Virus record (IMG/VR): IMGVR_UViG_3300046787_000286
Coordinates: 124,001 to 188,000 of that record
DNA length: 64,000 nucleotides
Strand: one strand, 5' to 3'
Part shown: one piece after another, positions 2 through 62,500 of the stretch
Numbering within the stretch: position 1 is the stretch's first letter
How the letters are laid out: each line of letters opens with the position of its first letter
The notes under the pieces: model-generated
What the model was told of the DNA's origin: nothing
Database searches by the model: none
What the model saw: the letters and a program-made list of their open reading frames with translations, nothing else
Program-made: the position numbers and the translations under genes

Positions 2-1729
2 ATCAAAGTGACGCTCAAACGGATGTCCTTTTAGTAAACTAAATGTAGTAAGTAGTTTACCTTTTATTTGTCCGGTAAGGCCGCCTCCGGTATACTTGCC
101 AACTTGAATACTACCGCGTGTGCTTACTGCACCTTTGTTACGTCCACCCGCTCTAGTCTCATAGTATGAGTAAAGCATTGTTGGGCCATACTCCATTGGG
201 TCGTGTGGAACAAAGCGGGCTTTGATTGTTGTCTTTACAACGTTTTCTACACAGTCGAAGTCTTTGGCTACAATTTGTTTTACTTGTTCAATGAATTCGG
301 GCCATGGAATAAACTTACGTGATCCACCACCTTCATCCGGAACAAATTCGGTTAAGTGGGCTTCGTTCATTTTACCATCACTACTAAATCCATAATATTT
401 CGCTACATCTTGTAAATCACTAGGACGGTACTTGTTGAGAAAGTCTGATATTAAATCGTGGATGTGTCCGGAGTTCCCTGCTTGGTCTAATGCACCGGGC
501 AAAGGTATTTCACCATATTTCCATCTAATATGCACACCACCAGGACTGTCTATGTACCAACGTCTTCCGTCCCAGTCTAAACCAAATTTATCTACTGTTA
601 CTTTTAGTTGTATGTCTTTGGCCGGAGTACCTGGCACAGTCTCGCACCATATGTCAAATTGATTGTTGCGTAGATATCTTGATTTGTATGGCTTGCCGAA
701 GTTTGGCGGCACATATCTGTCTCCATCATCGCCATTACCTGGAGCGAACTCGTTTAGTTGGTCAGCTAGTTGTTCTTCACTCCAGCCAATGTAGCTATCA
801 CTATCATCGTCGCCGATACGCATAACATACGCACCGCCTTCCTCGCTTTCAAGCTCGCCAATTTCCCAACCGACTTTGGCTAAGGCTTGTTCTACTCGAC
901 GTTGTGTAGCTACATCTGGGGCAGAATACCACATTTTAGCAAATCGAAGTAACACATCTTCGGGGTCATTTTCTCTGTCGTTACCACTGCCGGGTGCAAA
1001 TTCGTTTAGTTCTTCATCTTCAGTCATGCTAAAGTCCTTCTTCATGAAGTCCTTGGTTCTAGACACTGCTGGCTGTATTTTTTTAAGTTTAGGTGGCTTG
1101 CTTCTAAACATCACAGAACCTAGCATATTACTTTCGTCTAGCGTGGTACCCATGGCTGCGTCTAGCATTTTAACAACAGTAGCAGCAAGTTTAGGATTTA
1201 TTTGTGTTTTTGGGTACAAACTCATTACAAGAGCTGTCTTACGTCTAGTATCCAATGTGGGCCATGCTGTGCGTATTTCTGTAGCACTAGTCATACCAGG
1301 ACCAAACTCCACTGTGGGCAAGTAAGCCATGTAAGCATGCTTATTCATCGGAGCAAGTTCATCTTGTCCTTCATAAGGTTGCAAGTATGCAGGGTTGCCA
1401 TCTTTTTTAACGCCGCCTGCTTGTGGTGGTTTGTTTGCGTCCTTTTCCGAACGTACAAAAATTAATTGGGTGGTTTCGGGATCAAAGTGATCTGTAACTT
1501 CTCGTGCTTGAAACGGTGACTTAACTTGTATGAATTTACCAGGATTAACGCCTGCTAGTTTAGCAAGTTTTTCTTTAACAGCAAACGGGAATGGTCTAGC
1601 GGATGTGTCGTTGGTTGCAGCCACATAGACATCTGCGCCGGGGAAAGCATCTTGTGCTTGTTGGTATAGTGCGTAATGGCCAGCGTGGAACGGATGAAAT
1701 CCGCCTGGCATGATAATAACTTGCTTCAT
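2..1729 (-). CDS. HxGH nucleotidyltransferase-domain protein with C-terminal modules (polyprotein-like); runs off the left edge
   Basis: Absent from ORF track (no stop in window). Manual translation MKQVIIMPGGFHPFHAGHYALYQQAQDAFPGADVYVAATND...; later in-frame junctions TLDE, ELNE-FAPG, QLNE-FAPG, HLTE-FVPD; TAAATA 6 nt upstream of ATG. Confidence 0.8.
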   Translation of the reverse strand, partial: MKQVIIMPGGFHPFHAGHYALYQQAQDAFPGADVYVAATNDTSARPFPFAVKEKLAKLAGVNPGKFIQVKSPFQAREVTDHFDPETTQLIFVRSEKDANKPPQAGGVKKDGNPAYLQPYEGQDELAPMNKHAYMAYLPTVEFGPGMTSATEIRTAWPTLDTRRKTALVMSLYPKTQINPKLAATVVKMLDAAMGTTLDESNMLGSVMFRSKPPKLKKIQPAVSRTKDFMKKDFSMTEDEELNEFAPGSGNDRENDPEDVLLRFAKMWYSAPDVATQRRVEQALAKVGWEIGELESEEGGAYVMRIGDDDSDSYIGWSEEQLADQLNEFAPGNGDDGDRYVPPNFGKPYKSRYLRNNQFDIWCETVPGTPAKDIQLKVTVDKFGLDWDGRRWYIDSPGGVHIRWKYGEIPLPGALDQAGNSGHIHDLISDFLNKYRPSDLQDVAKYYGFSSDGKMNEAHLTEFVPDEGGGSRKFIPWPEFIEQVKQIVAKDFDCVENVVKTTIKARFVPHDPMEYGPTMLYSYYETRAGGRNKGAVSTRGSIQVGKYTGGGLTGQIKGKLLTTFSLLKGHPFERHFD

Positions 1730-2317: not shown

Positions 2318-3001
2318 TTATTTAGCCACGATCTGCTTGGTCTGCCGTGTGATATTAGGCACAACCATGTTCAGGAACAACAGCTCGCCGTCATTGTTGT
2401 GATCAATGAAGAAGTGGGCATGTGTCCAGTTTATCCACCAATTCTTAGTAGGAGTGTTGACCCAGTCTTTTAATCCCGGGCCCATACGTACATTCTCACG
2501 TGCCTTCAAGTATTCAACTAGTGTATTACGTTGGGAATCGTCGATTGCTTTGGATCTAAAATAAGTCCTATGAGTCCATTTTGGATCGTATAACGCAATT
2601 GTGCCCACTGGGCAAATTTGATGTGCTTCCTGTATTTGTATCTTGTCAAGAGTTGGCAAGTAATACAGTGTTTTTACTAAATCAAAGTCATTGGTATAAA
2701 CATACCCACGATCATAGGAAACTACAAACTTTAGTTGCTCTTTGTGACGAACTAATAAGCGACACAACTCCTCAAGGTTCTGTTGCATTCCTGAATCAAT
2801 CCGATGCATTTGAAAGCTGCCGCCGTAAAGCTGTTTGTGTTCTGTCCGCCAGCGATTACGCTCCTGTACTAATTTATCGATCTTATCAGGGTTCAGTCCC
2901 CTGATAATCCCGAGCTCGCGCAAATCAAATCTAACACTGTATCTGTATTTCCCGAAGAAAGGTTGATTGGTTTCCACGGGTTTTACTTTAAGGTTGGACA
3001 A
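2318..3001 (-). CDS. hypothetical protein
   Basis: 227 aa ORF overlapping clpA stop. Confidence 0.75.
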   Translation of the reverse strand: MSNLKVKPVETNQPFFGKYRYSVRFDLRELGIIRGLNPDKIDKLVQERNRWRTEHKQLYGGSFQMHRIDSGMQQNLEELCRLLVRHKEQLKFVVSYDRGYVYTNDFDLVKTLYYLPTLDKIQIQEAHQICPVGTIALYDPKWTHRTYFRSKAIDDSQRNTLVEYLKARENVRMGPGLKDWVNTPTKNWWINWTHAHFFIDHNNDGELLFLNMVVPNITRQTKQIVAK

Positions 3002-5231
3002 TTGTCAAACCCTCGACGGAAGTTTCTACAGTTTCAAACGCAATATTGTCACCGTCTAAGTTAGCAACTACAGAGCAATCACGCAGGTTATCAAACAAGA
3101 TCTTCTTTGATAATGGCACACGGATCAACTCATCAATCTTGCGTGACAGTGGACGAGCACCCATCAGCGGATCGTAACCCTTGTCTGCTAGATAGTCAAC
3201 AACACTTTCGCTCAGTGTGAGTTTGATGTTCTTGGTGTTCAAGCTAGTTTGCAGTTCATCCACAAACTTAACAACAATCTTCTTGATAGCAAGTTTATCC
3301 AACTTGCCAAACTTACAGATCTTGTCAATACGGTTACGCAGTTCTGGACGGAAGAACTCTTTGAGAGCTTTGTCATCTTCGCCTGTTTTCTCTTGCCCAC
3401 CAAAACCAATGTTTAGACGTTCACTATCCTTGGCACCCAAGTTTGATGTCATGATAATGATTGTGTTCTTACAGCTCACAGTCTTACCATTTGAACTTGT
3501 GATGCGACCTTCGTCTAGCATTTGCAAGAAGATGTTGACCACATCAGGATGTGCTTTTTCAACTTCGTCAAACAACATAACAGCATAAGGGTTCTTGGTC
3601 AAGTCACTGATCAACTTGCCACCGCCTACGTTACCGTCTTCAAATCCCACATAGCCCGGAGGAGCACCAATCAAGCTACTAACTGTGTGACGCTCTTGAT
3701 ACTCACTCATATCGTAGCGTAACAGTGTCATGTCCAGATTATCTGCCAACAACTTAGCAAGTTCTGTTTTACCTGTACCTGTTGGGCCCAGGAACAAGAA
3801 GCTAGCAATAGGTTTCTTGTCGTTACCGATACCTGAATAGTTAATGTAAACACGTTCCAGCACTGTGTCCACAGCAGAGTCTTGTCCGTAGAGCTTTTGC
3901 TTGATGTTAGTTTCGAGCTCCGCAATGTTAGCAGAGCGCTCGTTTTGCAACTTGTCTAACGGAATACCCAAGATCTTGCTAACTTGCTCTTCGATCATGC
4001 TCTTGGTAACGGAAACGTTGCCTTGGTCCTTAACACGTTGTCTAGCACACGCACCATCGATGAGATCGATTGACTTATCGGGATTCTTTCGATCATGAAT
4101 ATATCGGCCCGATAGTTCCACTGCGGCGGTGATAGCTTCAGTTTCGATGAGGACATTATGAAAAGTTTCGAGTCGGGGAGAGAGCCCAATGAGAATCTGT
4201 TCTGTTGTACTAGGAGTTGGCTCATCAATGGCCACGCGATGGAACCTACGCATAAGGGCTCGATCTTTCTCAAAGCTCTCGTAATATTCTTCCCATGTAG
4301 TAGATGCAACAACTTTTAGGTTTCCTTTGGTAATTGCTGGCTTGAGCATGTTGGCAAAGTCTAACGAACTGTTATTGCCTGCACCTGCACCTTGCATGGT
4401 GTGAGCTTCGTCGATGAACAAGATGCAGTTTTTCTTTGCTTCCAACGCACCGATCACAGCACGGAACTTTTCTTCAAACTCGCCGCGATATTTAGATCCT
4501 GCAAGCAATGCAGAAATCTCAAGACTCCACACCTCGTGATTCTTCAAGAACTCAGGTACATTGTTATTGTTTACTTCTTGCGCAAGACCTTCAATGATAG
4601 CAGTTTTACCAACACCAGGATCGCCTACCATAAGCACGTTTGCTTTAAAACGTCGAGCCAACACAGTGATCATTTCTTCTAGCTCTTTGCTTCGACCGAT
4701 CATGGGCTCTAATCGATTTTCTTTAGCTAGTTTGGTTAAGTTAGTGCAGTGCTCACTCAAGATCTCACTTGCTTGATCTGGGCTCAACTTTTGAGCTTCT
4801 TCGTGTGCATAATGCTTTTGCCAGAATGCCACAAACTCACGGCTCTTGACACCGTACTTGAGCAAGAAATATTGTGCATGACTATTGTGTTCGGCCATGA
4901 TAGCCAAGTACAAGTCGATAGTAGTTAATGTAGTTCGGCCGGTAAAGGATACTTGTGTAAATGCGCGATTAATAACACGCACTAGAGCCTCAGTCTTCTT
5001 GGGCTTTGTAATGTCCATTTTAACTAGATTAACCAAGCTATCCAGGTAAGCACCAAGCTCTGATTCAAACTGCTCACTTGCTACGCCAAATTTATCTAGG
5101 CATTTTCTAAACGGGGCATGTTGTAGCATAGCCATTAACAAATGCTCTGTAAGCATGTATTCATGATTGCGAACATGCGCTAATTTAATAGCTGAGTCGA
5201 TGATTTGTTCAATTTCGGGATTGTTTTGCAT
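2988..5231 (-). CDS. clpA: ClpA-type AAA+ unfoldase
   Basis: Clp N-domain (EHLLMAML), Walker A GDPGVGKT and GPTGTGKT, Walker B LFIDEAH and LFDEVEKAH, IGF ClpP-docking loop, no ClpB middle domain. Confidence 0.93.
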   Translation of the reverse strand: MQNNPEIEQIIDSAIKLAHVRNHEYMLTEHLLMAMLQHAPFRKCLDKFGVASEQFESELGAYLDSLVNLVKMDITKPKKTEALVRVINRAFTQVSFTGRTTLTTIDLYLAIMAEHNSHAQYFLLKYGVKSREFVAFWQKHYAHEEAQKLSPDQASEILSEHCTNLTKLAKENRLEPMIGRSKELEEMITVLARRFKANVLMVGDPGVGKTAIIEGLAQEVNNNNVPEFLKNHEVWSLEISALLAGSKYRGEFEEKFRAVIGALEAKKNCILFIDEAHTMQGAGAGNNSSLDFANMLKPAITKGNLKVVASTTWEEYYESFEKDRALMRRFHRVAIDEPTPSTTEQILIGLSPRLETFHNVLIETEAITAAVELSGRYIHDRKNPDKSIDLIDGACARQRVKDQGNVSVTKSMIEEQVSKILGIPLDKLQNERSANIAELETNIKQKLYGQDSAVDTVLERVYINYSGIGNDKKPIASFLFLGPTGTGKTELAKLLADNLDMTLLRYDMSEYQERHTVSSLIGAPPGYVGFEDGNVGGGKLISDLTKNPYAVMLFDEVEKAHPDVVNIFLQMLDEGRITSSNGKTVSCKNTIIIMTSNLGAKDSERLNIGFGGQEKTGEDDKALKEFFRPELRNRIDKICKFGKLDKLAIKKIVVKFVDELQTSLNTKNIKLTLSESVVDYLADKGYDPLMGARPLSRKIDELIRVPLSKKILFDNLRDCSVVANLDGDNIAFETVETSVEGLTIVQP

Positions 5232-5280: not shown

Positions 5281-6069
5281 TTAGCGACCTGTTTGTTGCC
5301 GAATTAGTGCTAATAGATCTTCGGGTATGTTTCGGGGAATTTCTGCTTGTAATCGAATCATCATGTCCCCGGGATTTCGGGATCGATCCGGTAAACCTCG
5401 CCCGCGACAACGAAGGATTTGACCTGGTTGTGTCATTGGCGGAATGGCAACGTTTAGTTCACGATTTAGGATATCCTTGACCATGATGTCACCACCTGCA
5501 ATCATGGTCCAAATATCAACCTTTTGGTCAGTGTACAGGTTGTACCCATCGCGTTGCCATTTTGGATTTGGGTGAATTCTAAATGTGACCACTAGATCTA
5601 CACCACCAGGTGCTAGCCCCGGGTACATTACCGACGCACCATCTTCTACGCCAGGCGGGATATCAATTTCTACAATTTGACTACCGGAATGACTGCCCAC
5701 ACTAACAGTTCGTTTTCCACCGGAAGCTACATCACTTAACTGAATCCATAAACTCATTCTAGCCTGGGCAGGCCGTCGTTGTTGGTTATGATTAAACTGT
5801 GCCCCAAACATGTTGAAGATGTTGTCAAAGTCAAATGGTTGCCCACCTGCTTGACGGAAACCAAATTGACCAAAGTCGGGACGCGGAGTATCGTGTGCTG
5901 CACGTTGCTCTGGGTCACTCAGTACACGATATGCTTCTTCAAGCTCTTGGAATTTGGCCGTGTCGCCGCCTTTGTCCGGATGAAATTTTGATGCCAGCCG
6001 TCTATACGCCTGCTTTATTTGTTCCGGAGTTGCAGACTTATCAACCCCAAGTGTTTCATAGTATTTCAT
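5281..6069 (-). CDS. dnaJ: DnaJ/CbpA-type J-domain chaperone lacking the zinc finger
   Basis: YYETLGV...HPDKGG J domain, G/F-rich linker, DnaJ C-terminal domain. Confidence 0.92.
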
Positions 6070-9574: not shown

Positions 9575-10561
9575 TTAACCGCGTTCTGGAAAATAGTCTA
9601 CAATACTACTTTGCCTGCGTATGTCTACTGTAATGCAGTGCATGCCGCCGTCCCAAAATCCACGACAACGGAATGGTACCCAATGCACTGTGATACCGCG
9701 TTCACTTAGTGTCTGCTCTAGTGCCCCATTATAGCCCAGCATCATTACAGTGGATTCGTTTATTACCAAACAGTTTAGTTCGAAGAATGTTTCTGTGTAA
9801 TCGCCTACCCAGTCTTGAGCATGCTTGATAACATGCTCGTTGAAACTGCGATTTAATTCAACGCCTTCTGCATAAAACTTACCATTGTATTCCCCGCCTA
9901 CAGGGGGTGTAGTTCTGTGATTCCAGTATGTGGATTCACTTAAAAAGATACATTCCCATCCTGGAAAATTACGTTCGTACCCATCATAGTAATGGTTAGC
10001 AATGATCAGTCCTGGCTTGAGAATAGCAAAGCAGCCGTCCATGTGGCCGCCATTCTTTTCCCAGGTGATTCTGTAGTCTTTAAAAAGATTTAAATTGAGC
10101 TCTGGTGCGTCAAATATATCAGTATCAATAACAATATCTTTGCCTAGTCGCACAACATTGGCGCCATTGATAACGTGATTTGCACCAGGTGCAGTTTGTT
10201 TGTTGTATAACGCTAACGTGCTACGCCACGCTGCGCCTGCGTTGTATGGCGTTAGTAATGTGTTGCCCACTGTTAGAAATGTATCTCTAGGACATATCTC
10301 AGGCTTAGTTAACACACCATTTGAGTCAACAAAATCATTTATGTTGAGGTATTCCGGACGGCGTACTGTGATACCAAATGATTCTAATTTGCTTTGTATT
10401 ACAGCCAGGTCCTGTTTTGTTATTTCAGTTATTTTATAAAATACATCACGCACAGCAGGATCTAAATGATCGTACCAGGAACTGGGGTATACATCTCCAA
10501 GCCAGACTTCTTCCAGTTGACTCCATGAATTGTGACTGTTAATCAATACAGGTCTTTCCAT
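9575..10561 (-). CDS. amidinotransferase (pentein fold; glycine/inosamine amidinotransferase-like)
   Basis: NSHNSWSQLEEVWLG, CPRD, HMDG, GGMHCITVDIRR motifs. Confidence 0.85.
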   Translation of the reverse strand: MERPVLINSHNSWSQLEEVWLGDVYPSSWYDHLDPAVRDVFYKITEITKQDLAVIQSKLESFGITVRRPEYLNINDFVDSNGVLTKPEICPRDTFLTVGNTLLTPYNAGAAWRSTLALYNKQTAPGANHVINGANVVRLGKDIVIDTDIFDAPELNLNLFKDYRITWEKNGGHMDGCFAILKPGLIIANHYYDGYERNFPGWECIFLSESTYWNHRTTPPVGGEYNGKFYAEGVELNRSFNEHVIKHAQDWVGDYTETFFELNCLVINESTVMMLGYNGALEQTLSERGITVHWVPFRCRGFWDGGMHCITVDIRRQSSIVDYFPERG

Positions 10562-11760
10562 TTATCTACTAGGTAGTTCTTTAGATCCACTGGGGTCTTT
10601 ATGTTGTTTTGGCGCATGAAGTTGTTGATCTTTGCAGCACTAGCGTAGTCTGCATTACCGGGCTTGCGGGCATTGCTTAGATCAACGCCTAACCCGTCGT
10701 CTTCATTTCTATAGCCCTGTCCGTACACTATAAGACTCTTTAGTTTGCGCTGAGCCGACGGAGTTAGTTCTGTCTTGGCTTTTTTATAGATCAATTCCAG
10801 CCAGTCTTCCAAATAGTTACGACTCGGACTAAATGATCTGCGAACCGGCTGCGCACCTTTTAGCAACTCGCCTGCTTGAGCTGGGCTAACTGCTTTTCTT
10901 TTATCCTGTAGTTTCCAAGCTGTTTCGTCTGTGTATAAGAACGCAGGAATACCTTGTTTCTTTGCTGATAGTAATACTGTGCGCACTTCTGGTGAACGAT
11001 TTTCCATTTGTTCTTTTAACAGCACATGAACTTCTCGAATGCTTTCTGCATTAGCAGGGATAGCAGGAGTTCGACTATACACACGGTCTTCTGCTTCTCT
11101 AGAACGTGTGCCATCTGAGTGCAGCCATGAACGATTCCAATAATCAATGGGCCTTGTTTTGTAGTTGTTGTTTAGCCAAGAGCCATTCAACACAAACATC
11201 GCAGCTGAACTGCCCACATAACGATTATGGTAGTCCCCTACTCGTGTTCTTGTGGTGCTTAGGAAATAAGGATAGCCAGGAATCTCATAGTCCTTTTCAG
11301 CTTGTGTTCCTGTAGAGCTTGCTAGTAGAAACTCTCCAGAAGTTAGGATACGTGCTGCTGCTGCGGTATTTGTATAGTGATACAAAATAGCCGACGCTGC
11401 TTCTGTTAATTGTTCTTCTTCCCACACACGTTCTTCACCGCGATGCTTGTCCCAGAAATTCGATCCAGCATCAGTTTGGTCAAAACTTCTGTTGATACGG
11501 TACCCGTGAGTTTTTACGAAATCATACATCACTCGAGCAACACCTTGCCCACGATACTGGTCTTTGATAAACAAATCTTGCGCTTCTAAATCATACATGT
11601 CAGTTACTTCGAAAGTAACATGGCCGATCTCTCTACGGCCAGATGGGTCATACACAGTTACAATGACTTCGTCATCGCCCTCGACTATTCTGAATCTAAG
11701 CCCACTAAACTCTTCAGTGGGTTGCTCTTTATATTCTACAATGAATTCTGCTGCTCTCAT
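10543..11760 (-). CDS. putative head-packaged protein: leader + GNAT acetyltransferase + ADP-ribosyltransferase-like domain
   Basis: Start MRAAEFIVE 5 nt after TAAATA; GNAT motif A YRGQGVA; linker EEQLTE; ART-like LYHYT...FLSTTR...EAEDRV. Confidence 0.7.
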   Translation of the reverse strand: MRAAEFIVEYKEQPTEEFSGLRFRIVEGDDEVIVTVYDPSGRREIGHVTFEVTDMYDLEAQDLFIKDQYRGQGVARVMYDFVKTHGYRINRSFDQTDAGSNFWDKHRGEERVWEEEQLTEAASAILYHYTNTAAAARILTSGEFLLASSTGTQAEKDYEIPGYPYFLSTTRTRVGDYHNRYVGSSAAMFVLNGSWLNNNYKTRPIDYWNRSWLHSDGTRSREAEDRVYSRTPAIPANAESIREVHVLLKEQMENRSPEVRTVLLSAKKQGIPAFLYTDETAWKLQDKRKAVSPAQAGELLKGAQPVRRSFSPSRNYLEDWLELIYKKAKTELTPSAQRKLKSLIVYGQGYRNEDDGLGVDLSNARKPGNADYASAAKINNFMRQNNIKTPVDLKNYLVDKWKDLY

Positions 11761-11768
11761 ATTAATAT

Positions 11769-12263
11769 TTAATTGCTTTGATAAGTTGCACCATAGCCAA
11801 CCCAAGCAGGTGCGGTGTATCCTTGGGGATATGCTTGAAGATGTTGTATAGTACGATGCCAACCTTCAATCAAGTCATACCCATTATTTAATTTAGCAAC
11901 AATAATAGGTTCTTCACTTACACCGGTTTGTTGAATCATTTTTAATTGCTGTGCGTGACGTTCTGCATCTTTTGGTACTTTATATGGATTAGCCAAACCG
12001 CCTTCGCGACTGTGAATCATTTGTTGTGTTTTGGGTGTAAAAATGTCTAGTGTGATAGGTAGCTTTTGTAAACGCCATTGTACTTGACCAAAGTCTTGTT
12101 TATTTCTTTTTAGAAAATCATCTAGTTCAGCTTGGCTTCTAATACCTTTTGCTTGTTGGTATAAAAAGTCTTTTAACACGTAATCAGGCCAGGTGGGAAA
12201 CTGTTGCTTGACATAAGCAAATAATGATCCCCTGGACTCTGTTAGGAATTCTTGTGCTCTCAT
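11769..12263 (-). CDS. putative head-packaged ParB/Srx-like domain protein
   Basis: Leader MRAQEFLTE; PIIV...YDLIEGWHR ParB-N motif. Confidence 0.7.
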   Translation of the reverse strand: MRAQEFLTESRGSLFAYVKQQFPTWPDYVLKDFLYQQAKGIRSQAELDDFLKRNKQDFGQVQWRLQKLPITLDIFTPKTQQMIHSREGGLANPYKVPKDAERHAQQLKMIQQTGVSEEPIIVAKLNNGYDLIEGWHRTIQHLQAYPQGYTAPAWVGYGATYQSN

Positions 12264-12264
12264 A

Positions 12265-12882
12265 TTACAACACCCAAGGATCGTTAATTACAGGCGTGCC
12301 ATTGGCTCGCATCATGATGTTGCCATCGTGCAAATCCCAGGCGTAGCCAGCACGGTCGCCTATAGCTTCAAGTTTCCGAGCAGTCTTTAAAAATTGTGTG
12401 ATACCCTCTACACCAAATTGCTTTATTAATTTGGCGTAGGTGTTGGGGTTTGTTTCTTGAACATGTCTAAGAGTAGTCTTTATTGAATCGTAGTCTATTA
12501 CGTCTGACACCATGCCCGATAACACAGTACCTACTGAACCTGAATCCTTTAGCGGCTCTGTGCGAATCATTAGATAGCGATGTTTTTCATCGTCGTCCCA
12601 GGGATGCCAAAAGAAACTTTCGTGTCCATAAAATCTTGGCAAGAACGGATTTGATTGATTCTTCTCGCAGAACTTGTACCATCTAAAGAACATTTTATGA
12701 TCTTGGCTGAACTGAGCTGTTTCGCCTGTGCCAAATATCTTTAAGACATGCCCTGTACCGGGTTCCATAAATGCAGTTTGGTCCACGCCTTGACCTAGGT
12801 ACTTGTAGCCTTTCTTTTTCAAGGCATTGATTACAGACTGGTCTGTTTCAGAATATTCGTCTAAAAATTCGTGAGATCTCAT
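12265..12882 (-). CDS. putative head-packaged protein-kinase-like enzyme
   Basis: Leader MRSHEFLDE; LGQG glycine loop, VLKIF, DLHDGNIM catalytic loop, INDP. Confidence 0.75.
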   Translation of the reverse strand: MRSHEFLDEYSETDQSVINALKKKGYKYLGQGVDQTAFMEPGTGHVLKIFGTGETAQFSQDHKMFFRWYKFCEKNQSNPFLPRFYGHESFFWHPWDDDEKHRYLMIRTEPLKDSGSVGTVLSGMVSDVIDYDSIKTTLRHVQETNPNTYAKLIKQFGVEGITQFLKTARKLEAIGDRAGYAWDLHDGNIMMRANGTPVINDPWVL

Positions 12883-13185: not shown

Positions 13186-15126
13186 TTAGCAGTTCCAACG
13201 TCTACGTGCTTTACAAATTGCTTTGTCTGGAGTTTTAGCACATGAAATATTGTGCATGTTCATTTGACCTTTGGAGCGTGAGCAGTAGCTCTTTCTGCGT
13301 TTGCTTGCTTTAGAGCCCTTCTTTAGTTTAGAAGGCTTGGTAGTAACTGCTGTTTGCAGCTTTGATCCAGGATTTGCTCTGCGATATGCTTTTACAGCCT
13401 TGCGACTCATGCCGTCTGTTCTGTCACTCTTGTTGGCTTTTTGCCAGTCTTCGTTCAACTGAGAAGTCACGGCAAACACATACAGTTCATCGTGTGATAA
13501 AGATTCTAAATCTTCCCAAATCATTTCGGGATCTACGCCATTATGATCTGCAATTCGGTTAATAGAAGATTCAATTAAATCAAATTCTTCCGTTAATTCA
13601 GGATCTATACCTTGTGCTTTTTCGCTTTGTAGATAATCCCATACTGTCACAAGATAATCTTCAGCCAGGCTGATCTTTTCTTGACACCATTCAGGCAAGT
13701 TATCGCGATCGTCGATCACTTGTTGCAAGCCTTCTACAGCATTCTTTAGTGTGTGCAAGCTGCCGTGTGCCATGCCTGCTTCGTCATCGTACTCGGCATT
13801 GTAGTCTTCTGCTGCGCCTTGCTCTGTGATCCCACCGTCGCTGTCAAATCTTGGCTGAGTTCTTCCTGCCTGACCGCCTTGGGTCATATTACGCCCATTG
13901 CTTGGTATTCTTTTGGGTCCAATGGCTGGCGGCGATTTAAACGCACGGTTGCTTAGTTTAACAGTAGTACGACCTGGCACAGTGCGATCTATTGCAAGCC
14001 CAGTTTTTGGATCATGGGCAGCTCGCGCATAAAATGCAAGCTCGTCTCTAGTAAATCCGTCTTTTTCTTGGTGTGGCTCTGCTAGTGCCGCTAATTGATC
14101 TTTAATTCGTTGGCGTTCTGTGCTATTGTTAGTTGCGTGTAATTGCTTTTGCAACAGATGTCTCTGGTATATACGCTCATGCTCTTCATCATCGTCGTTT
14201 AAGCCTTCCGCCACACCTTCTTTAGTCTTTAAGCGTTTGAGAACAGCCATGTTCTCAGGCTTGCTCATGGTTTTCTTCAATGCGTCCAGCGCACGATCCT
14301 GTATGGCTTTGCTAGTCATCATACTATCTGGACCAATATGAATGTCTGGACCATTACTTGTATTGTGCTTGTCTCTTGACCCGTATGTGCTATGTCTCTT
14401 ACGATTGCTACCGTCACGTCCTGCACCGTCGCCGTCCATTTCTTTGATCTTATTGCCTTGTTGGTCAATGCCCGAGTTTGGTGGAAGATATACCTGCTTA
14501 CATGGCATGCATACTTGAACAGCATGTCCCTGGTACTTGCCACCTTGTAAGTCTCCGCCGCACTTGGGGCATGTGTGCATGTGGGAAATATCGCCGCGAT
14601 GCTTCTTTGGAAACTGTACAACTTCGCCTTCCTCTACAGATTCTTTTGGAACACAGTTATTAACTCGCACCCCACCCTTGACTTTGGTCTTGGGATTGCC
14701 AATTTTTTTGTTGTCCCAGCAAGCAGGATCCAAGCGAACTTTTTCTTCCGCTACACCTTGCTCAATGATGTCACCGCGAGCTTTAGCAACTTTAAACAAT
14801 GCAAACAAACTATCCCAGTCATGGGTGTTATTCATTTTGTCTTTGTATAGCTGTTGCTTTTCTGGTTTAATCTTAGCTAGGAACTTGTGCTTCATGCTGT
14901 GATTAGACGGAAATCCTGAGTAGTCATTGCCCAAATCTTTTACAGTGTAATCAAAGCCTTCGTCAATTGTTTTTAACTGACTGCGCAACTGATCTGCCAT
15001 TTTTAAATGATGATCACGTTTGATATCTTTGCTCTGCTTGGCAGCTTTTTCGTGAGCAGTAATTTGTGCCCATAATGCGTTTTGTTTACGCTGGTCTTTG
15101 TCTTCGTTGATTTCGTCGAATCTCAT
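13186..15126 (-). CDS. multi-module polyprotein-like putative internal head protein (646 aa)
   Basis: Start MRFDEINE; about 9 dissimilar modules separated by IDE, QGVAE, SVEE, IKE, EGVAE, QGAAE, LTE, LNE. Confidence 0.75.
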   Translation of the reverse strand: MRFDEINEDKDQRKQNALWAQITAHEKAAKQSKDIKRDHHLKMADQLRSQLKTIDEGFDYTVKDLGNDYSGFPSNHSMKHKFLAKIKPEKQQLYKDKMNNTHDWDSLFALFKVAKARGDIIEQGVAEEKVRLDPACWDNKKIGNPKTKVKGGVRVNNCVPKESVEEGEVVQFPKKHRGDISHMHTCPKCGGDLQGGKYQGHAVQVCMPCKQVYLPPNSGIDQQGNKIKEMDGDGAGRDGSNRKRHSTYGSRDKHNTSNGPDIHIGPDSMMTSKAIQDRALDALKKTMSKPENMAVLKRLKTKEGVAEGLNDDDEEHERIYQRHLLQKQLHATNNSTERQRIKDQLAALAEPHQEKDGFTRDELAFYARAAHDPKTGLAIDRTVPGRTTVKLSNRAFKSPPAIGPKRIPSNGRNMTQGGQAGRTQPRFDSDGGITEQGAAEDYNAEYDDEAGMAHGSLHTLKNAVEGLQQVIDDRDNLPEWCQEKISLAEDYLVTVWDYLQSEKAQGIDPELTEEFDLIESSINRIADHNGVDPEMIWEDLESLSHDELYVFAVTSQLNEDWQKANKSDRTDGMSRKAVKAYRRANPGSKLQTAVTTKPSKLKKGSKASKRRKSYCSRSKGQMNMHNISCAKTPDKAICKARRRWNC

Positions 15127-21965: not shown

Positions 21966-22595
21966 TTAGTGACCGTTGTTATGTAACCAGGCGCCTTTGT
22001 TAAAGCTGTTGCTCCAGCTTGCTGCATCTGCTCCGCCTTTGCGTTGGCTCCATTCGTAGCCTGCACGGTGTCCTGAACAGTCCTTGGTGCATTGCGAACC
22101 GCGGAATGTTAGTTCGTTTAATTGTGATTCATCTAGTTCATTGCCACTAAACGCAACAACATCATACGGGCCCCATGGATTGCCAGTGCGGCTGTCAATA
22201 TCATTACCAGCATCGTCGTAATCACTATATTCGTAATGATCATCGCTTTGAATCTCTACACCGTCAAAATTAGCATTGTAGCCAATGCTGTATTTGCGTA
22301 CTTTGCCGTCGCCACAATGAATACCACGCTCTAAGATGCGTTCTATATCTTCTTGGCTTTTGATGCCTGCATGTAGATCGCCTGTGTTAAATGTATCATT
22401 ATACCAAGCTGATGCTAGTGCTTTTAAATAGTTCCCGCCGGAACTGCTGCCACCTGGGGAAAATTCCGTTAAATCTTCATTCTTTTTGCGTCCAGCACAG
22501 TGAGCTTTTTGACTAAAGCCTTTGGGACTGGCACAATTGATAGAGCGCTTGTATTTTGCACTCCACTCTTCTGAAATGAATTCCGTTGCTCGCAT
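21966..22595 (-). CDS. three-module polyprotein-like putative internal head protein
   Basis: Leader MRATEFISE; junctions DLTE-FSPG and QLNE-LTFR. Confidence 0.7.
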   Translation of the reverse strand: MRATEFISEEWSAKYKRSINCASPKGFSQKAHCAGRKKNEDLTEFSPGGSSSGGNYLKALASAWYNDTFNTGDLHAGIKSQEDIERILERGIHCGDGKVRKYSIGYNANFDGVEIQSDDHYEYSDYDDAGNDIDSRTGNPWGPYDVVAFSGNELDESQLNELTFRGSQCTKDCSGHRAGYEWSQRKGGADAASWSNSFNKGAWLHNNGH

Positions 22596-37963: not shown

Positions 37964-38348
37964 GGCGCATCTTTGAAATTTCGATTGCTTCTTCGTCACT
38001 GAACACAGGCACAGCGTTTGACTTGTGCATGGTTGCAATGCCTTTTACTTTGGTACCAGTGTATACTTTTGGTGCTGCCATTGTAGCGTTACCACCTGTA
38101 TTCACACTTGGGATATGATGCGTGTTGCTACGACCAACCGGTGTGGTCAGTTTGTATTGCAACGGTTCGGCTTTCATAGCACGGCTACGGCGCTTTTCGT
38201 CAGCATCCACTTCCCACTTCTTTTGCAGTTCTTTCCAGGCAGCATCAAGCTCACGTGCTTTCTTTGCTTCTTCTGCATTACGGAATTTAACTTTGCCCTT
38301 GCGCTTGCCGTTGTAGCTCAAGCTAGGGTGATGTAAGTGCATGCTCAT
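37956..38348 (-). CDS. basic hypothetical phage protein
   Basis: C-terminal GIATMHKSNAVPVF. Confidence 0.7.
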   Translation of the reverse strand: MSMHLHHPSLSYNGKRKGKVKFRNAEEAKKARELDAAWKELQKKWEVDADEKRRSRAMKAEPLQYKLTTPVGRSNTHHIPSVNTGGNATMAAPKVYTGTKVKGIATMHKSNAVPVFSDEEAIEISKMRRG

Positions 38349-38581
38349 TGTAGTGTGCGAGGTTCGTTGTTGAGTGTTTGTTTGAGGATCTCGATTTCCT
38401 CTTCAGAGAGATTGTCCCAGTCAACTGGCTTGCTCGCGGCTTCAAGTTCTTCAGGGCTCATGTTACTAAACATGTCCATGATTTCTGCCATCATCTGATC
38501 AAGCTCTTCTTGCGTTCCATCAAAATGATCAAACGCACCAGGTGCAAATTCTATTTCTAACGGTTTTTTAGTATCAGTCAT
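38345..38581 (-). CDS. small acidic protein
   Basis: coupled ORF. Confidence 0.7.
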   Translation of the reverse strand: MTDTKKPLEIEFAPGAFDHFDGTQEELDQMMAEIMDMFSNMSPEELEAASKPVDWDNLSEEEIEILKQTLNNEPRTLQ

Positions 38582-43735: not shown

Positions 43736-45262
43736 TTACTTGTTGATCAGGTGTCGCACAGCTTCTAATTCAGGAATGTAGTCACCAAGTTGACTGTTTC
43801 TGGCTGCGTCCAATTTATCATTGAATTCAAAAAACTTACGCAACTTCTCTACATCAAAGGTAGGATTTGTTTTGTAATACTCGTACATAGAATCAATTGC
43901 GCTCTTGTTAGATTTGCCATCGCTCATGTACATATTGGTTTTCATACACCTAGACAAACTGTCTAACGCCATCTCAACATTGGGATGGATAAACGGGCTT
44001 TGATGTTCGACATAATTTATCTGTACGTACACCGAAGTGTCTGGCAATTCTCGATCTAAAAATTCATAAAGCAAATGTAAGTTCGTAACATTGTAAATTC
44101 CTGGAACACAGTTGATAGATATACGATGCCCATGGCTTTTTAATAATTTTATATTTTTAATAATAGTATCAAAGTTACTGCCCCAACGCCAATAATCGTT
44201 CACACGCCCGTATCCGTCTAAACTTATGCTGAAATTTACTACAGAAAAGTGATTGCACAGATTTAAAAAGCGTTGACTAATTTTTTGTCCGTTTGTGCCA
44301 AACGTGAGTTCAAAATCTGTTTTGTTTGCTGCTATACATCTTTCCATGAAAGTGAGAACTTCCGGGATAACAGTTGGATCGCCACCGGTCAAGTATATCC
44401 GTGACAATGGTGACAATGTATTGATGTCGATCCTATCAATATTGGAATATTGGTACTGCTCGGTATCATTTACCCACTTACTAAAAGTGATGTTGTGCTG
44501 TTTAAATTCAGCTTCAATCCGATGACTGTATGCTGGACGGCAACCTCTGCACATTAGATTGCACTTGTTGCTCAGTCGCAATTCATATAGATAAGGATGA
44601 GTAATCTTGTCGAGATCCTCAAACGATTGGATGTTTAATTTATTAATCCAATCCCGAGTTTCAAATTGCCGATAGCTCTCAATACCTTTATCTTCGTATT
44701 CTTCGTAGCAAAACCCGCAGTGCTCAGGTATGCGTTCTCCTGCTAACATTTTTTGTCTAATAGCCTGATAATCAGGATTGGTCTTCCAGTCAACAATTTT
44801 ATCAGGGGTTGTTACATTTGCCCTGGCTCTGGGACAAAGGCGTGTGGTGCCATTTTCCTCAGTGAAATTTATCCATGGGTAAATGCAAAAACTTTTATTC
44901 TCGGTTGTTAGTTTGTCAATTGAGTGAGCAGCTAGCACATTGGCATTGTCTTTGTATACTACATCATAGCCGCGTTGGTCAATCTCTTCCATGATCTTTA
45001 TAGTACTCAACAATGGCTTCCAATTAGTCCATTGACTAATCGGCTGATCTAATAGAACAATTTGATCAAAGTAATCAGCCAACTTGACTATAGCGCCAAA
45101 CGGTATGTCTAAAACAGTAGTATGATAAAATCCATCATGGGCAGGCACAAAGTCTGCCTGACTAATAAGACCGTGATTAATTGTGTTATGCGTTGCGGCC
45201 AACACACTTACACGACGATCGGTATCTTCATCGTTGTTTCCTAAATATAAAACTTTGTTCAT
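43736..45262 (-). CDS. radical SAM protein with N-terminal twitch/SPASM-like Cys cluster
   Basis: CNLMCRGC, LTGGDP, TNG, SISLDG; FCIYPW...CGFC. Confidence 0.88.
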   Translation of the reverse strand: MNKVLYLGNNDEDTDRRVSVLAATHNTINHGLISQADFVPAHDGFYHTTVLDIPFGAIVKLADYFDQIVLLDQPISQWTNWKPLLSTIKIMEEIDQRGYDVVYKDNANVLAAHSIDKLTTENKSFCIYPWINFTEENGTTRLCPRARANVTTPDKIVDWKTNPDYQAIRQKMLAGERIPEHCGFCYEEYEDKGIESYRQFETRDWINKLNIQSFEDLDKITHPYLYELRLSNKCNLMCRGCRPAYSHRIEAEFKQHNITFSKWVNDTEQYQYSNIDRIDINTLSPLSRIYLTGGDPTVIPEVLTFMERCIAANKTDFELTFGTNGQKISQRFLNLCNHFSVVNFSISLDGYGRVNDYWRWGSNFDTIIKNIKLLKSHGHRISINCVPGIYNVTNLHLLYEFLDRELPDTSVYVQINYVEHQSPFIHPNVEMALDSLSRCMKTNMYMSDGKSNKSAIDSMYEYYKTNPTFDVEKLRKFFEFNDKLDAARNSQLGDYIPELEAVRHLINK

Positions 45263-59541: not shown

Positions 59542-62500
59542 ATGGCAAACCAAATTAACATTGATATCGGTGCAGCAGCAAATGACGGCACAGGCGATCC
59601 GTTACGCACCGCGTTTAATTACGTAAACAACAACTTTTCTAACGTTTGGAATACAGGATTACCTAACTCAAACGTTCAATTTTCTGACAATAGAATTTTA
59701 ACAGTTAACACCAACGCTAACTTGGTGTTGGCACCTAATGGCATTGGCAAAGTTGCATCCAACGTTGATATTGTGCCTAACACAGCTAATGTATTTGCGC
59801 TAGGTGGGGCAAGTCGTCGTTGGAACACAGTTTACGGACAGTATTTAGATTTATCGCACAATGCAGTTATTGGCGGGAATTTAGTTGTTACAGGTAACTT
59901 ATCAGCAGGGAATATCAGTTACACATCTAATGTATTTGTTGGCGACCTAGAAGGATCAGTGTTCGACGGTGCTAGTTCGATTGTGTTGGATGTAATTGAC
60001 AGTACCATTTACGTAGACAACTATCGTTATGCAAATGGCGTTCCTGTTTCTTTTGGCGGCAATTATAGCAATGCAAACGTGGCAGCATATTTGCCAACTT
60101 ACACTGGCAATCTCAGTGCTAATAATATCACAGCTGGCAATGTGTTCACTGCACAGACAGTAACAGCAAATGATGCATACATTAACACTGGCACCTTTGC
60201 CGGGGATGAGAATACCGGAGACGCTGCAATGTACGTTGGATCGCCAACGTTTACTAACCTGGGCTCAGATATCATGGCCCAGTTTACAGGCAACGTAACA
60301 ACCTACGCTCAAATCAACTTGCAGAACTGGAGTAATGCTGCCACTGCATCCGGCGATTACATTTTAACAGCAGACAACGGCAACGACTCTACTCACTTCC
60401 TGGATATGGGTATAACCAGTTCTACCTGGGACGGTACACAAACAAACGTCTTAACCGGTCTCAATCCAAACAACGGTTACTTGTATGTACAAGATGGCAA
60501 CTTAACACTGGGCACAAGAGCAGGCAACGTAAGTTATAGCTGGAAGTTTGATACCACAGGCAACTTAACTGTGGCCGGAAACGTTATCCCCACAGGCAAC
60601 AACACACAGAGTTTAGGTAGTGCAACCCAGCAATGGAATGACTTGTATTTGTCCAATGCTACAATTTACATGAACTCTGTGCCGATCAGTTTGACTGCCG
60701 ACAATGTGCTCACAGTCAATGGTGCAGATGTTGTAACAACCAACAGTGAAGGACAGGCAAACATTGGTAACCTTGACATCAACGGCACTGTTATTCAAAT
60801 TGCAGAAGGTGCTTCAGAAACTCTAATCAATATTACTCCTAGTGGACCTACCGCAGGTTGGGCATATTTACAACTTCCCACAAATGGCACTGCAAATACA
60901 GCCAACACACGCTTGCATAACGATGCCGGCAATATAGAATTTGGTACAGGAGATTTTTCAACAGGTAGCACCAACTATACTTGGACATTTAACAACACCG
61001 GAACCTTGGTTTTTCCTGCCAACCCTAATGGTCAAATCTATGGTGGCCAAGACAACGATTTTATCATCACCACCTCCAATGCCAATGCTGCCACATACTA
61101 TTTTACTTTCAGTCAGTTAGGCGATCTCACAGTTCCTATCAATCTCAATGTGTCGGGCAATGTCTATACAAATGATATTGTAGGAGCAGGAGCTGGCAAC
61201 ATCACAATCACAGCTAACACACAGTCATGGTTATTTGATGACACTGGCATGTTGACTTTGCCCAGCGAGGGTCAGATTAGATCTGTGGCCAACACTGGCA
61301 TGAGACTCAGTGCTGGTGCCAGCGATGTCACTGGCTTGTTGTTAAACAACACTGGCGATGCTGAACTCTATGCTAATGCCAATGTATCCGTATACACTGA
61401 CTCTGGAAACACCGGCTGGACGTTTGACACTGCTGGTAATCTAACACTTCCTGGTAACGCTGGTGCAAACAATGCAAGCATTTCAGCAACAGTCAATGGT
61501 AGTATTCTAGGCCTAAACAGTCAGGCTAATGGTTCAGTAAGATTGAGAGCATATGGCAGTGCTGCCAACCTGGTTGCTGGCATGGCTGTGTTTGGTGAAG
61601 ACGGTGAAGTTGATCGTGTTCAAATCAGCACTTATAACCCTGGCATTGATGATAACAACGCTTGGGTATTTAACACTAGTGGCGATTTAACCACGCCAGA
61701 TGGTAACATATTCTTTGGCACAGGCGCTAATAGTGCTGTTATTGTGCCAGCAGGTAATTCTGTTAAAATAGCCGCAGATCGCGGAAATACTTCAAAAAAT
61801 TATATTGATATAACCAGCAGTGGAATAACCATTGATGCACTAGGTGGTTCCACTGCTGACATTAGAATAAGAGCCGCAGATGATATTTTTGTGCAAGGCG
61901 GGGACAAAACAAGTGCTCCGGGACAACGCGGTGGTGATATCAATATTGATGGTGGCCAAGGTGGCCCAGACAATGGTGTCAATGCAGGCGACGGCGGCGA
62001 CATTGCCATTCAAGGTGGCCTGGGCGGCGAGATATTAGCAGGTGGATCAGGCGACGGCGGCGATGTGACACTGCTTGGTGGTACAGGTAGCACCGCCAAC
62101 GTTGCTAATTTACTAGGGGCAGGCCGCGGCGGCCTGGTGGTGATACAAGGTGGTCAAGGTGGCGATCAAGCAGGCAACACTTCTCTATCAGAGCGCGGCG
62201 GCAACGTTGACATCTACGGCGGCCAAGGCAGTTTTGACTTTGCGAACACTTTGCCAAGTGGTCTTCCAGGCCATGTTAACCTCTATGGTGGCAACTGGGG
62301 ATTTGTCAATGCTCCAAGTGGCAACATCTATCTCAATACCTATGACGGAACAAACTTCAAGACATTGACCTACGATACTGCTGGCAATGTCACAATGGCC
62401 GCTGGTGGTGCATTAAACATGGTGGGATCAAGTTCGGGCATTGTTCAATCGCCAAACAATGATTTGATTGTCACAGTTCAAGATGATGACAATGACGATT

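What the first reader, a model, noticed from the sequence alone, without database searches (positions are those of the whole stretch)
2..1729. Unlisted ORF: nucleotidyltransferase followed by a module array with repeated LNE-FAPG junctions
Seen: a reading frame of about 576 codons runs off the window. An HxGH (FHAGH) nucleotidyltransferase domain is followed by TLDE, ELNE-FAPG (about 990-1012), QLNE-FAPG (about 737-760) and HLTE-FVPD (about 335-360). The sequence after each junction differs. The same junction type (DLTE-FSPG) occurs in the gene at 21966-22595. Inference: the junction is a conserved cleavage and recombination tag heading exchangeable cargo modules.
Basis: partly seen in the sequence, partly recalled or inferred. 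Interest (0 to 1): 0.72.

Follow-up and report, generated by a model that had tools for sequence, protein, structure and literature searches.

The report
Cargo polyprotein with protease-site junctions
A giant T4-related phage encodes an enzyme fused to a string of swappable small protein modules, each headed by a short tag that looks like the signal phage T4 uses to cut and load proteins into its head, pointing to a large untapped pool of proteins that are probably injected.

Summary
An intact 667-codon minus-strand gene (window 1729 to 2, running 275 nt past the left edge) encodes an HxGH nucleotidyltransferase followed by dissimilar modules separated by LNE-FAPG, LNE-FAPG and LTE-FVPD.

- **Chance:** it is excluded. 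Three hits are seen; two or more never occurred in 20,000 shuffles.
- **Structure:** AlphaFold2 places every junction in a disordered linker between compact folds, so this is not a repeat domain.
- **Shuffling:** thousands of metagenomic relatives keep the N-domain at 70-90% identity but shuffle the modules. Homology breakpoints pile up at the junctions.
- **Ownership of the tag:** the tag travels with the downstream module and also forms the N-terminus of stand-alone module genes.
- **Level of selection:** its codons vary synonymously, so selection acts on the peptide, not the DNA.
- **Universal feature:** [LIVM]-x-E ends nearly every module. This matches the L/I-x-E cleavage rule of the T4 prohead protease gp21.
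- **Lineage:** near-complete 350-kb relatives encode gp21 and gp23 homologues. Neighbouring genes start with MRAxEF[LIV]xE, mirroring the T4 capsid-targeting sequence MKTYQEFIAE.

Best reading: a polyprotein of head-packaged, injected cargo that is cut by the prohead protease. Neither cleavage nor packaging has been shown. I rate it a new variant of a known kind.

The parts
2..1729 (-). Codons 1-576 of an intact 667-codon gene. The remaining 91 codons and the stop lie left of the window (genome 123726-124000).
1145..1729 (-). N-terminal HxGH-class nucleotidyltransferase domain (aa 1-195). It carries GGFHPFHAGH and a SATEIR second motif, and its fold is nearest to NaMN/NMN adenylyltransferase (NadD) and PPAT.
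   Evidence: Pfam CTP_transf_like E 0.004, below the cut-off. PDB profile PPAT E 0.012. AF2 pLDDT 75-95. Foldseek NadD E 1e-4, target TM 0.5-0.6. 70-90% identical in thousands of relatives.
1133..1141 (-). L197-D198-E199. This [L]xE delimiter ends the enzyme domain, at the place where relatives carry ELNEFAP.
   Evidence: 106 of 109 N-domains are followed by [LIVM]xE within 16 aa
1010..1132 (-). Module L (aa 200-240), a basic segment predicted to be disordered. It recurs at other positions in 21 relatives.
992..1009 (-). Junction 1: L241-N-E-F-A-P246, in a disordered linker.
761..970 (-). Module A folded core (aa 254-323; two helices and a small sheet). It is found in about 60 of the 120 top relatives and in many other proteins.
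740..757 (-). Junction 2: L325-N-E-F-A-P330. The model becomes disordered from aa 329.
356..739 (-). Module B (aa 331-458). It is rare among close relatives but is found in dozens of other proteins, including stand-alone ones. No structure was modelled.
338..355 (-). Junction 3: L459-T-E-F-V-P464, followed by DEGGGS.
2..304 (-). Module C1 (aa 476-592; the window holds it to aa 576). It is the commonest module and shows a weak E2/UBC-like fold resemblance. Beyond the window lie the linker with V604-A-E606, module C2 (aa 611-653) and the tail EDYVDEKK.
21966..22595 (-). A 209-aa gene with three parts: a CTS-like leader MRATEFISE (22569-22595), a basic Cys/His motif, then the junction L42-T-E-F-S-P47 (22455-22472) heading a module shared with other array proteins.
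10543..11760 (-). Gene starting MRAAEFIVE (CTS-like leader), with a weak GNAT match.
11769..12263 (-). Gene starting MRAQEFLTE (CTS-like leader).
12265..12882 (-). Gene starting MRSHEFLDE (CTS-like leader).
13186..15126 (-). A 646-aa gene starting MRFDEINE, with a C-terminal DUF6321.

Best explanation
The gene encodes a polyprotein of head-packaged cargo in a T4-related jumbo phage of about 350 kb.

An NMN/NaMN-adenylyltransferase-like enzyme is followed by small, unrelated, independently folding modules. Each module carries its own N-terminal tag: [LIV]-x-E, then F-A-P, then an acidic, glycine-rich spacer. The tag is the internal form of the short N-terminal leader seen on stand-alone module genes, which resembles the T4 capsid-targeting sequence.

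Inferred steps, none of them shown:
1. The precursor is built into the prohead core.
2. The phage's gp21-type prohead protease cuts after the Glu of each [LIV]-x-E.
3. The enzyme and the modules are released as separate proteins.
4. They leave the head with the DNA at infection and act early in the host. Probable roles are counter-defence or takeover, as for T4 IPI and Alt.

Shown here: the modular anatomy, the disordered junctions, peptide-level conservation, module shuffling, and T4-type head genes in the lineage.
For: **Lineage.** Four of five near-complete relatives that carry the gene encode Peptidase_S77/gp21 (E 1e-23 to 1e-28) and Gp23 (E about 1e-98), in T4 gene order. The part of relative G004 that has no counterpart in our 62%-complete contig (80-160 kb) is the part that holds these genes.

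**Protease specificity.** The relatives' capsid proteins keep L-x-E just before the conserved mature N-terminus, although the sequence there differs: QLLAE|S and YLKE|N.

**Delimiters.** [LIVM]xE follows 97% of N, 81% of A, 95% of C1 and 96% of C2 module ends, against 23% of random windows. It is present even where FAP is replaced by G or A, as in GVAE|G. gp21 cuts after L/I-x-E (PMC9026906).

**Leaders.** Six genes in this genome start MR[AS]xEF, and five of them continue [LIV]xE. Distant homologues start MNLFELFE and similar. T4 IPII and IPIII start MKTYQEFIAE and Alt starts MELITELFDE, read here from NC_000866.

**Stand-alone modules.** Some start MRLNEFAP... or MNLQDLFEFAPDEG.... Fused and separate forms would therefore give the same mature product.

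**Structure.** Junctions and the tail lie in low-pLDDT linkers between folded modules.

**Peptide, not DNA.** Junction codons vary freely at synonymous sites.

**Precedent.** T4 internal proteins are diverse and share only the CTS (PMC3012670). Alt is processed at both ends (PMC9026906).
Against: - No cleavage or virion data exist for this uncultured lineage.
- The target protein has no N-terminal leader, because its first residues form the first strand of the enzyme. How it would reach the prohead is unexplained. The conserved tail DY[LIV]xE is only a guess.
- gp21 and gp23 were not found on this contig itself.
- One 99%-complete relative (G005) gave no S77 or Gp23 match.
- The strong conservation of F-A-P after the Glu is not explained by the known gp21 rule.
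- In relative G004 the full junction occurs only once in 349 kb, so it is not a general head-protein site.
- The protease-peptide complex prediction gave no answer.
Confidence: 0.55

Rival explanations
1. The protein is an uncleaved multi-domain protein. The junction is a flexible linker that carries a short linear motif (EFAP plus an acidic tract). The motif docks each module to a common partner or simply insulates the domains, and the protein works as one chain, like the 'polyvalent proteins' of phages.
For: - Junctions lie in disordered linkers.
- F-A-P is more conserved than a bare protease site needs.
- The neighbours are large multi-domain proteins with Amidoligase_2, NTP_transf_2 and LysM domains.
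- N4 vRNAP-type polyvalent proteins are packaged unprocessed (PMC5512222).
Against: - The universal feature at module ends is [LIVM]xE, even where EFAP is absent.
- The same tag sits at the extreme N-terminus of stand-alone modules, where a linker is pointless.
- The leaders match the T4 CTS, which is removed by cleavage (PMC7411985).
Confidence: 0.2
2. The polyprotein is cut in the cytoplasm by a protease other than the prohead protease. The new N-terminal Phe then serves as an N-degron, read by the phage's own ClpS with ClpA and ClpP, which gives the released modules a set lifetime.
For: - The phage and four relatives tested encode ClpS.
- The phage also has a ClpA-like ATPase (window 2988-5231).
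- It has an ORF whose N-terminus I read, from my own knowledge, as ClpP-like.
- P1' is an invariant Phe followed by an unstructured tract.
- It is established that ClpS recognises N-terminal Phe, Leu, Trp and Tyr (own knowledge).
Against: - No candidate cytoplasmic protease was identified.
- Acidic residues next to the Phe should weaken ClpS binding (own knowledge).
- Other delimiters expose Gly, Ala, Ser or Asn rather than a degron residue.
- Phage-encoded ClpS is already known in other jumbo phages with no such link (PMC7824862).
Confidence: 0.1
3. The junction is a DNA-level recombination signal, meaning a short conserved sequence at which cassettes are exchanged.
For: Homology breakpoints concentrate at the junctions. 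T4-type phages are known to shuffle genes between conserved flanks (own knowledge).
Against: Sixteen junctions give 16 different 18-mers, with synonymous codons used about as in the genome at large. Only 18 nt are involved, which is too short and too variable for homologous or site-specific exchange.
Confidence: 0.03

Closest known systems
T4 internal proteins IPI, IPII, IPIII and Alt, with their capsid-targeting sequence (CTS) and gp21 processing
   Same: - A short leader with an aromatic residue followed by [LI]-x-E (T4: QEFIAE and TELFDE; here: xEF[LIV]xE and xELFE).
- Diverse, fast-changing small cargo proteins that share only the tag.
- A gp21/gp23-type head module in the lineage.
- An enzyme among the cargo (Alt in T4; a nucleotidyltransferase here).
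   Different: - Here the tags are also internal and string several cargo modules into one polypeptide.
- The tag is extended by F-A-P plus an acidic, glycine-rich spacer.
- The array protein itself has no N-terminal leader but has a conserved C-terminal tail.
- Nothing has been shown experimentally.
Ejection and inner-body proteins of phiKZ-like giant phages (phiKZ, 201phi2-1, SPN3US), processed by gp21-like proteases
   Same: Many head proteins are cut after Glu at a three-residue motif, and large amounts of protein are injected (PMC9026906, PMC7411985).
   Different: - The motif there is S/A/G-x-E or A-x-E, with long propeptides of 110-130 aa.
- The papers read here describe no shuffled module arrays with a conserved six-residue delimiter.
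Polyvalent proteins of phages and conjugative elements (Iyer et al. 2017, PMC5512222)
   Same: They are multi-domain, mosaic proteins that are probably injected and combine enzymes with small domains. Release of the domains by proteolysis has been proposed.
   Different: - Those proteins usually carry their own zincin-like MPTase or other signature domains (ArdC-N, DarB-like). None was detected here.
- No conserved inter-domain delimiter was described for them.
Viral polyproteins cut at conserved sites by a viral protease (for example picornavirus 3C sites)
   Same: One translation product yields several proteins through short conserved sites in flexible linkers.
   Different: - The genome is dsDNA rather than RNA.
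- The modules are accessory and interchangeable rather than a fixed set.
- The protease is a capsid-maturation enzyme.

Membership tests
T4-type CTS-tagged, gp21-processed internal head (ejection) proteins | The phage encodes a gp21-type (Peptidase_S77) prohead protease and a gp23-type capsid protein. | tested here: inconclusive
   Neither is found on this 62%-complete contig. Both are present in 4 of 5 near-complete relatives that carry the gene. The head module lies in the part of relative G004 that has no counterpart in our contig.
T4-type CTS-tagged, gp21-processed internal head (ejection) proteins | An N-terminal leader of about 10 aa, with an aromatic residue and ending in [LI]-x-E. | tested here: not met
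   The target protein starts MKQVIIMPGGFHPF, which is the first strand of the enzyme. The feature is met by the gene at 21966-22595, by four neighbouring genes in the window, and by stand-alone module genes elsewhere.
T4-type CTS-tagged, gp21-processed internal head (ejection) proteins | [LI]-x-E sites in accessible regions at the points of processing. | tested here: met
   LDE199, LNE243, LNE327, LTE461 and VAE606 all lie in low-pLDDT linkers. [LIVM]xE follows module ends in 81-97% of instances for N, A, C1 and C2 and in 56% for B, against 23% at random.
T4-type CTS-tagged, gp21-processed internal head (ejection) proteins | Actual cleavage after Glu, and presence in the virion. | not testable with these tools
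   There is no isolate and no proteome. The complex prediction of protease with junction peptide gave no answer.
HxGH nucleotidyltransferases (NadD/NMNAT, PPAT, cytidylyltransferases) | An (H/T)xGH motif at the end of strand 1 and an ISxTxxR-type second motif. | tested here: met
   FHAGH at aa 14-18 and SATEIR at aa 148-153 are invariant or nearly so in 50 relatives.
HxGH nucleotidyltransferases (NadD/NMNAT, PPAT, cytidylyltransferases) | A significant match to the family model or fold. | tested here: inconclusive
   Pfam PF01467 scores 17.8 bits, below the cut-off of 21. The PDB profile search gives E 0.012. Foldseek gives E 1e-4 and target TM 0.5-0.6 to NadD and PPAT. The fold class is supported; the substrate is unknown.
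Polyvalent proteins (Iyer et al. 2017) | Two to 15 unrelated domains in one phage polypeptide, with mosaic architectures. | tested here: met
   Relatives add HD, GNAT and TonB_C modules.
Polyvalent proteins (Iyer et al. 2017) | Signature domains of that class (MPTase, ArdC-N, DarB-type helicase or methylase, LPD families). | tested here: not met
   Pfam finds none in this protein or in 10 long relatives. The only trace is a weak Atlas lead to LPD11 at score 0.53.

The most novel reading that the evidence does not exclude
The invariant Phe after the cut site is a built-in N-degron. Cleavage at [L]xE|FAP would give every released module an N-terminal Phe on a flexible arm. The phage's own ClpS, ClpA-like ATPase and ClpP-like protease (or the host's ClpS and ClpAP) would read this, so injected or early cargo proteins would be destroyed on a timer. 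That would be a virus-encoded N-end-rule circuit coupled to capsid-protease processing.
Probability: 0.1. Interest if true: 0.85.

Novelty: new variant of a known kind. Interest (0 to 1): 0.62.

Why it matters
If the junctions are prohead-protease sites, this lineage of uncultured ~350-kb T4-related phages packs strings of interchangeable small proteins into its heads and injects them.

- **Discovery:** the tag x[LIV]xEFAP, and the leaders MRAxEF and MxxFELFE, would then be a simple sequence handle for pulling hundreds of unknown injected proteins out of metagenomes. Such proteins are likely anti-defence or host-takeover factors.
- **Scope of T4 biology:** it would extend the T4 capsid-targeting principle from single proteins to natural multi-cargo polyproteins.
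- **Application:** that is also of practical interest for protein delivery by phage capsids.
- **Enzyme function:** the highly conserved nucleotidyltransferase head is a testable candidate for an injected nucleotide or NAD-metabolism enzyme.

Tried and rejected
- **Folded repeat domain: rejected.** The modules do not resemble each other and the junctions are disordered.
- **Missed stop codon: rejected**.
- **DNA recombination site: rejected** on synonymous variation.
- **Close relatives among isolates:** a megablast of the region and a tblastn of the protein against 50,697 phage genomes gave nothing close. The ClpA-like gene reaches only about 40% identity to isolates, so the lineage is uncultured.
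- **First alignment attempt:** a MAFFT alignment of module fragments to the whole protein mis-stretched the fragments and was discarded. Collinear sub-alignments were used instead.
- **Head genes on this contig:** three PHROG scans, two of them aimed at possible structural regions, found no head genes. They found radical-SAM paralogues and metabolic genes instead.
- **T4 late promoter:** TATAAATA is rare here and uninformative.
- **General N-terminal leader regex:** it is not enriched proteome-wide. Only the specific MR[AS]xEF class stands out.
- **Module function:** Atlas and AlphaFold DB cluster searches with module C1 (alone, or with C2) gave no function. PDB Foldseek gave only a weak E2/UBC-like lead.
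- **Protease docking:** the complex prediction of protease with junction peptide gave no answer.
- **Literature:** a full-text search for the motif string found nothing relevant.
Full report
**What is in the sequence.**
The window is bases 124001-188000 of a 214,006-bp IMG/VR virus contig. The contig is linear and CheckV rates it 62% complete. On the minus strand a frame opens at window 1729 and is still open at base 2. In the contig it ends at genome 123726, giving an intact gene of 667 codons.

- FHAGH at aa 14-18.
- TLDE at aa 196-199.
- ELNEFAPG from aa 240 (L241 at window 1009).
- QLNEFAPG from aa 324 (L325 at window 757).
- HLTEFVPD from aa 458 (L459 at window 355).
- DLTEFSPG at window 22455-22472, in the gene at 21966-22595.

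The pattern [LI]xEF[AVS]P occurs three times in this protein. Only 0.34% of 20,000 shuffles had one hit and none had two. The whole predicted proteome has four hits against 0.17 expected.

**Anatomy.**
An AlphaFold2 model of aa 1-335, built on 50 collinear relatives, shows these regions:
- A folded N-domain, aa 1-195, with pLDDT 75-95.
- A disordered stretch, aa 196-253, with pLDDT about 30. It holds LDE199, the basic module L and junction 1.
- A small alpha/beta module A, aa 254-323.
- Disorder again from aa 329, at junction 2.

A second model, of aa 455-667 on 48 relatives, shows these regions:
- Junction 3 and its glycine tract at low confidence.
- A folded module C1, aa ~476-592.
- A linker with pLDDT below 50 at aa 601-607, which contains V604-A-E606.
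- A folded module C2, aa 611-653.
- A disordered tail, DEDYVDEKK.

The modules do not resemble each other or anything else in the contig. The refuting condition 'part of a folded repeat domain' is therefore not met.

The N-domain has both signature motifs of HxGH nucleotidyltransferases. Its sequence matches are weak: Pfam PF01467 is below the cut-off and the PDB profile search finds PPAT at E 0.012. Its fold is nearest to NaMN/NMN adenylyltransferases and PPAT (Foldseek E 1e-4, target TM 0.5-0.6). The substrate is unknown.

**A very large family with shuffled modules.**
A word-indexed search found 2,189 relatives among only the 8,000 candidates scored. The first ~200 residues are 70-90% identical, but total lengths run from 367 to 1,157 aa. 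In 87 of the 120 best hits the motif [LIVMF]xEFxP occurs one to four times, at different positions. The consensus is (E/Q/G)(E/Q/G/S)-L-N-E-F-A-P-(D/P/G/S), followed by a tract rich in Asp and Gly.

Each module of our protein is found elsewhere at other positions and in other orders, at 40-95% identity. Relatives insert other modules, including HD, GNAT and TonB-C domains.

An exhaustive HMMER search with aa 244-667 found 454 proteins, 77-1,601 aa long, in which A, B, C1 and C2 hit independently. Among the 141 new proteins in its listed hits, 104 carry at least one junction.

Internal homology breakpoints fall within 10 aa of a junction in 27% (starts) and 20% (ends) of cases, against 5.6% for random positions.

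In 80 related IMG/VR loci the gene product ranges from 207 to 1,102 aa. It nearly always ends in DY[LIVM][DE]E plus 0-4 residues, or in a basic Cys/His motif ...FSQRAHCAGRKK. The modules are thus inserted between a constant enzyme and a constant tail.

**The tag belongs to the downstream module and is a peptide signal.**
When anchored on the conserved start of C1, all 47 distinct contexts read x-[LIV]-x-E-F-A-P-D-E-G-G-G-S, whatever module lies upstream. Stand-alone genes begin MNLQDLFEFAPDEG..., MRAKDFLKEFAPNDE... or MGSEELNEFAPDEG.... Others begin MRLNEFAP, MRLREFAP or MKEFAP. The internal junction is therefore the same element as the N-terminal leader of single-module genes.

The two LNEFAPG junctions of our gene differ at five synonymous sites. 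Sixteen junctions from this and related genomes have 16 different 18-mers. Selection is on the peptide.

**Why a T4-type cleavage and targeting tag is the best reading.**

1. *The lineage has T4-type head genes.* Related IMG/VR contigs reach 343-364 kb and are 97-100% complete. Four of the five tested encode Peptidase_S77/gp21 and Gp23. In G004 the order is acidic core protein, protease, coiled-coil scaffold, capsid protein. Our contig shares 109 ORFs with G004 at a mean 48% identity. They map to G004 positions 20-76 kb and 160-340 kb, and none maps to 80-160 kb, where the head genes lie. The absence of these genes from our contig is therefore best explained by its incompleteness.

2. *The protease rule fits.* gp21 cuts after Glu in L/I-x-E (PMC9026906). 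The relatives' capsid proteins keep L-x-E immediately before the conserved mature N-terminus even though the residues differ: QLLAE|SSAG and YLKE|NAS.

3. *[LIVM]xE is the universal delimiter.* It follows the end of the module core within 16 aa as follows, against 23% of random windows:

| Module | Instances followed by [LIVM]xE |
|---|---|
| N | 106 of 109 |
| A | 85 of 105 |
| B | 20 of 36 |
| C1 | 55 of 58 |
| C2 | 24 of 25 |

   Where FAP is missing, the site reads GVAE|G, ELDE|G or EVTE|A. The invariant part is therefore the protease-type motif, not EFAP.

4. *The leaders match the T4 CTS.* Six genes in this genome start MR[AS]xEF, and five continue [LIV]xE: MRANEFVVE, MRAAEFIVE, MRAQEFLTE, MRSHEFLDE and MRATEFISE. 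Three more start MRFDEINE, MRWREIVE and MRQFEINE. Beyond the leader these genes are unrelated to each other. Distant homologues start MNLFELFE, MYAHELFE or MFIDQLFE. Read from NC_000866, T4 IPIII and IPII start MKTYQEFIAE|A and Alt starts MELITELFDE|D. In T4 the first 10 residues suffice for packaging. Residues 4 and 7 govern targeting, and residues 8 and 10 govern processing (PMC9026906). The T4 internal proteins are diverse and share only the CTS (PMC3012670).

5. *The neighbourhood looks like a cargo island.* It holds a 1,652-aa protein with NTP_transf_2 and Amidoligase_2, a leader-tagged Nudix hydrolase, a 1,214-aa LysM protein with weak transglycosylase and endolysin matches, and a 282-aa protein with QLDEFLPALG and the tail ADYIEEA.

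**What remains unexplained or against.**
- Nothing shows cleavage or packaging.
- The array protein has no N-terminal leader. The conserved tail (aromatic-[LIV]-x-E, like the core of the T4 CTS) might target it, and T4 Alt is trimmed at both ends (PMC9026906), but this is a guess.
- The conservation of F-A-P is not accounted for by the gp21 rule.
- In G004 the full junction occurs only once in the genome.
- G005 gave no S77 or Gp23 match.
- The complex prediction of a relative's protease with a junction peptide returned 'no answer' and is not evidence either way.

**Rivals.**
- An uncleaved linker with a docking motif remains possible (0.2).
- A more speculative reading links the invariant Phe to the N-end rule. 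The phage and four relatives encode ClpS. The phage also encodes a ClpA-like ATPase and a DnaJ, and an ORF that I read as ClpP-like from its N-terminus. However, other delimiters expose non-degron residues, and phage-encoded ClpS is already known in jumbo phages (PMC7824862).
- A DNA recombination signal is essentially excluded.

**Cargo function.**
It is unknown. Module C1 has only a weak E2/UBC-like fold match (Atg10, E 3e-3, TM 0.23-0.32). The Atlas search (C1 alone) and the AlphaFold DB cluster search (the C1-C2 model) gave nothing.

**Verdict.**
'Cleavage' is well motivated but inferred, and 'recombination tag' holds only in the sense that junctions are the joints.

Relative to what is known, this works like the T4 CTS and gp21 system and like the processed ejection proteins of giant phages. 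It is a new variant in three ways:
- The tags are internal and concatenate modules into polyproteins.
- The tag has a longer conserved form.
- The family is very large and uncharacterised.

Noticed in passing
window 2988-5231 and 5281-6069; genome 108552-109154 and 212366-212602 (outside the window): The phage carries a set of protein-quality-control genes: a ClpA/ClpB-type ATPase, a DnaJ, an ORF with a ClpP-like N-terminus (read by eye only) and ClpS. ClpS is also present in four relatives. The DnaJ-ClpA block lies just upstream of the array gene in relatives too.
   Followed up: partly
genome 21878-32279 (L004), window 43736-45262, genome 193829-195100: At least nine radical-SAM paralogues were found, seven of them in one plus-strand block next to a Nol-like carbamoyltransferase (genome 33404-34885). 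This looks like a biosynthetic or modification cluster.
   Followed up: no
genome 1239-15566 (L003): A single open reading frame of 4,775 codons lies near the contig start. It was not analysed.
   Followed up: no
window 21966-22595 (aa 11-38), and the C-termini of about half of the relatives: A basic Cys/His motif, WSxKYKxSINCxxPKGFSQ(K/R)AHCAGRKK, is the C-terminal end of many array proteins. Here it sits internally, directly before a junction. It may bind zinc or DNA.
   Followed up: partly
C-terminus of the target protein (genome 123729-123752) and of the ORF at genome 113807-114655: A conserved tail, (E)DY[LIVM][DE]E followed by 0-4 residues, ends most array proteins, including minimal forms of 207-247 aa that have no modules. 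Its core (aromatic-[LIV]-x-E) resembles the T4 CTS core.
   Followed up: partly
proteins P0221, P0270, P0280 and others returned: In more distant module proteins a second delimiter type appears at both ends: MSNILKGL... at the N-terminus and ...SAILKGLKL at the C-terminus.
   Followed up: no
genome 114657-115100 (L009), in the same gene cluster: A Dps/ferritin-like gene lies in the cluster. It matches PF00210 in the syntenic position of relatives. From my own knowledge, E. coli Dps is a classical ClpS N-end-rule substrate, which may be a coincidence.
   Followed up: no
window 38345-38581: A 78-aa ORF starts MTDTKKPLEIEFAPGAFD. This is a junction-like EFAPG close to the N-terminus.
   Followed up: no
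window 59542-63546 (+): A 1,334-aa ORF lies on the opposite strand to most genes and has no PHROG match.
   Followed up: no
proteins P0041, P0050, P0052, P0146 and P0147: A second, different HxGH-type head (MKRTGNSKIAVVGWGRGMGHTGHM...) is fused to the same modules. Nucleotidyltransferase heads have therefore been recruited to such arrays more than once.
   Followed up: no
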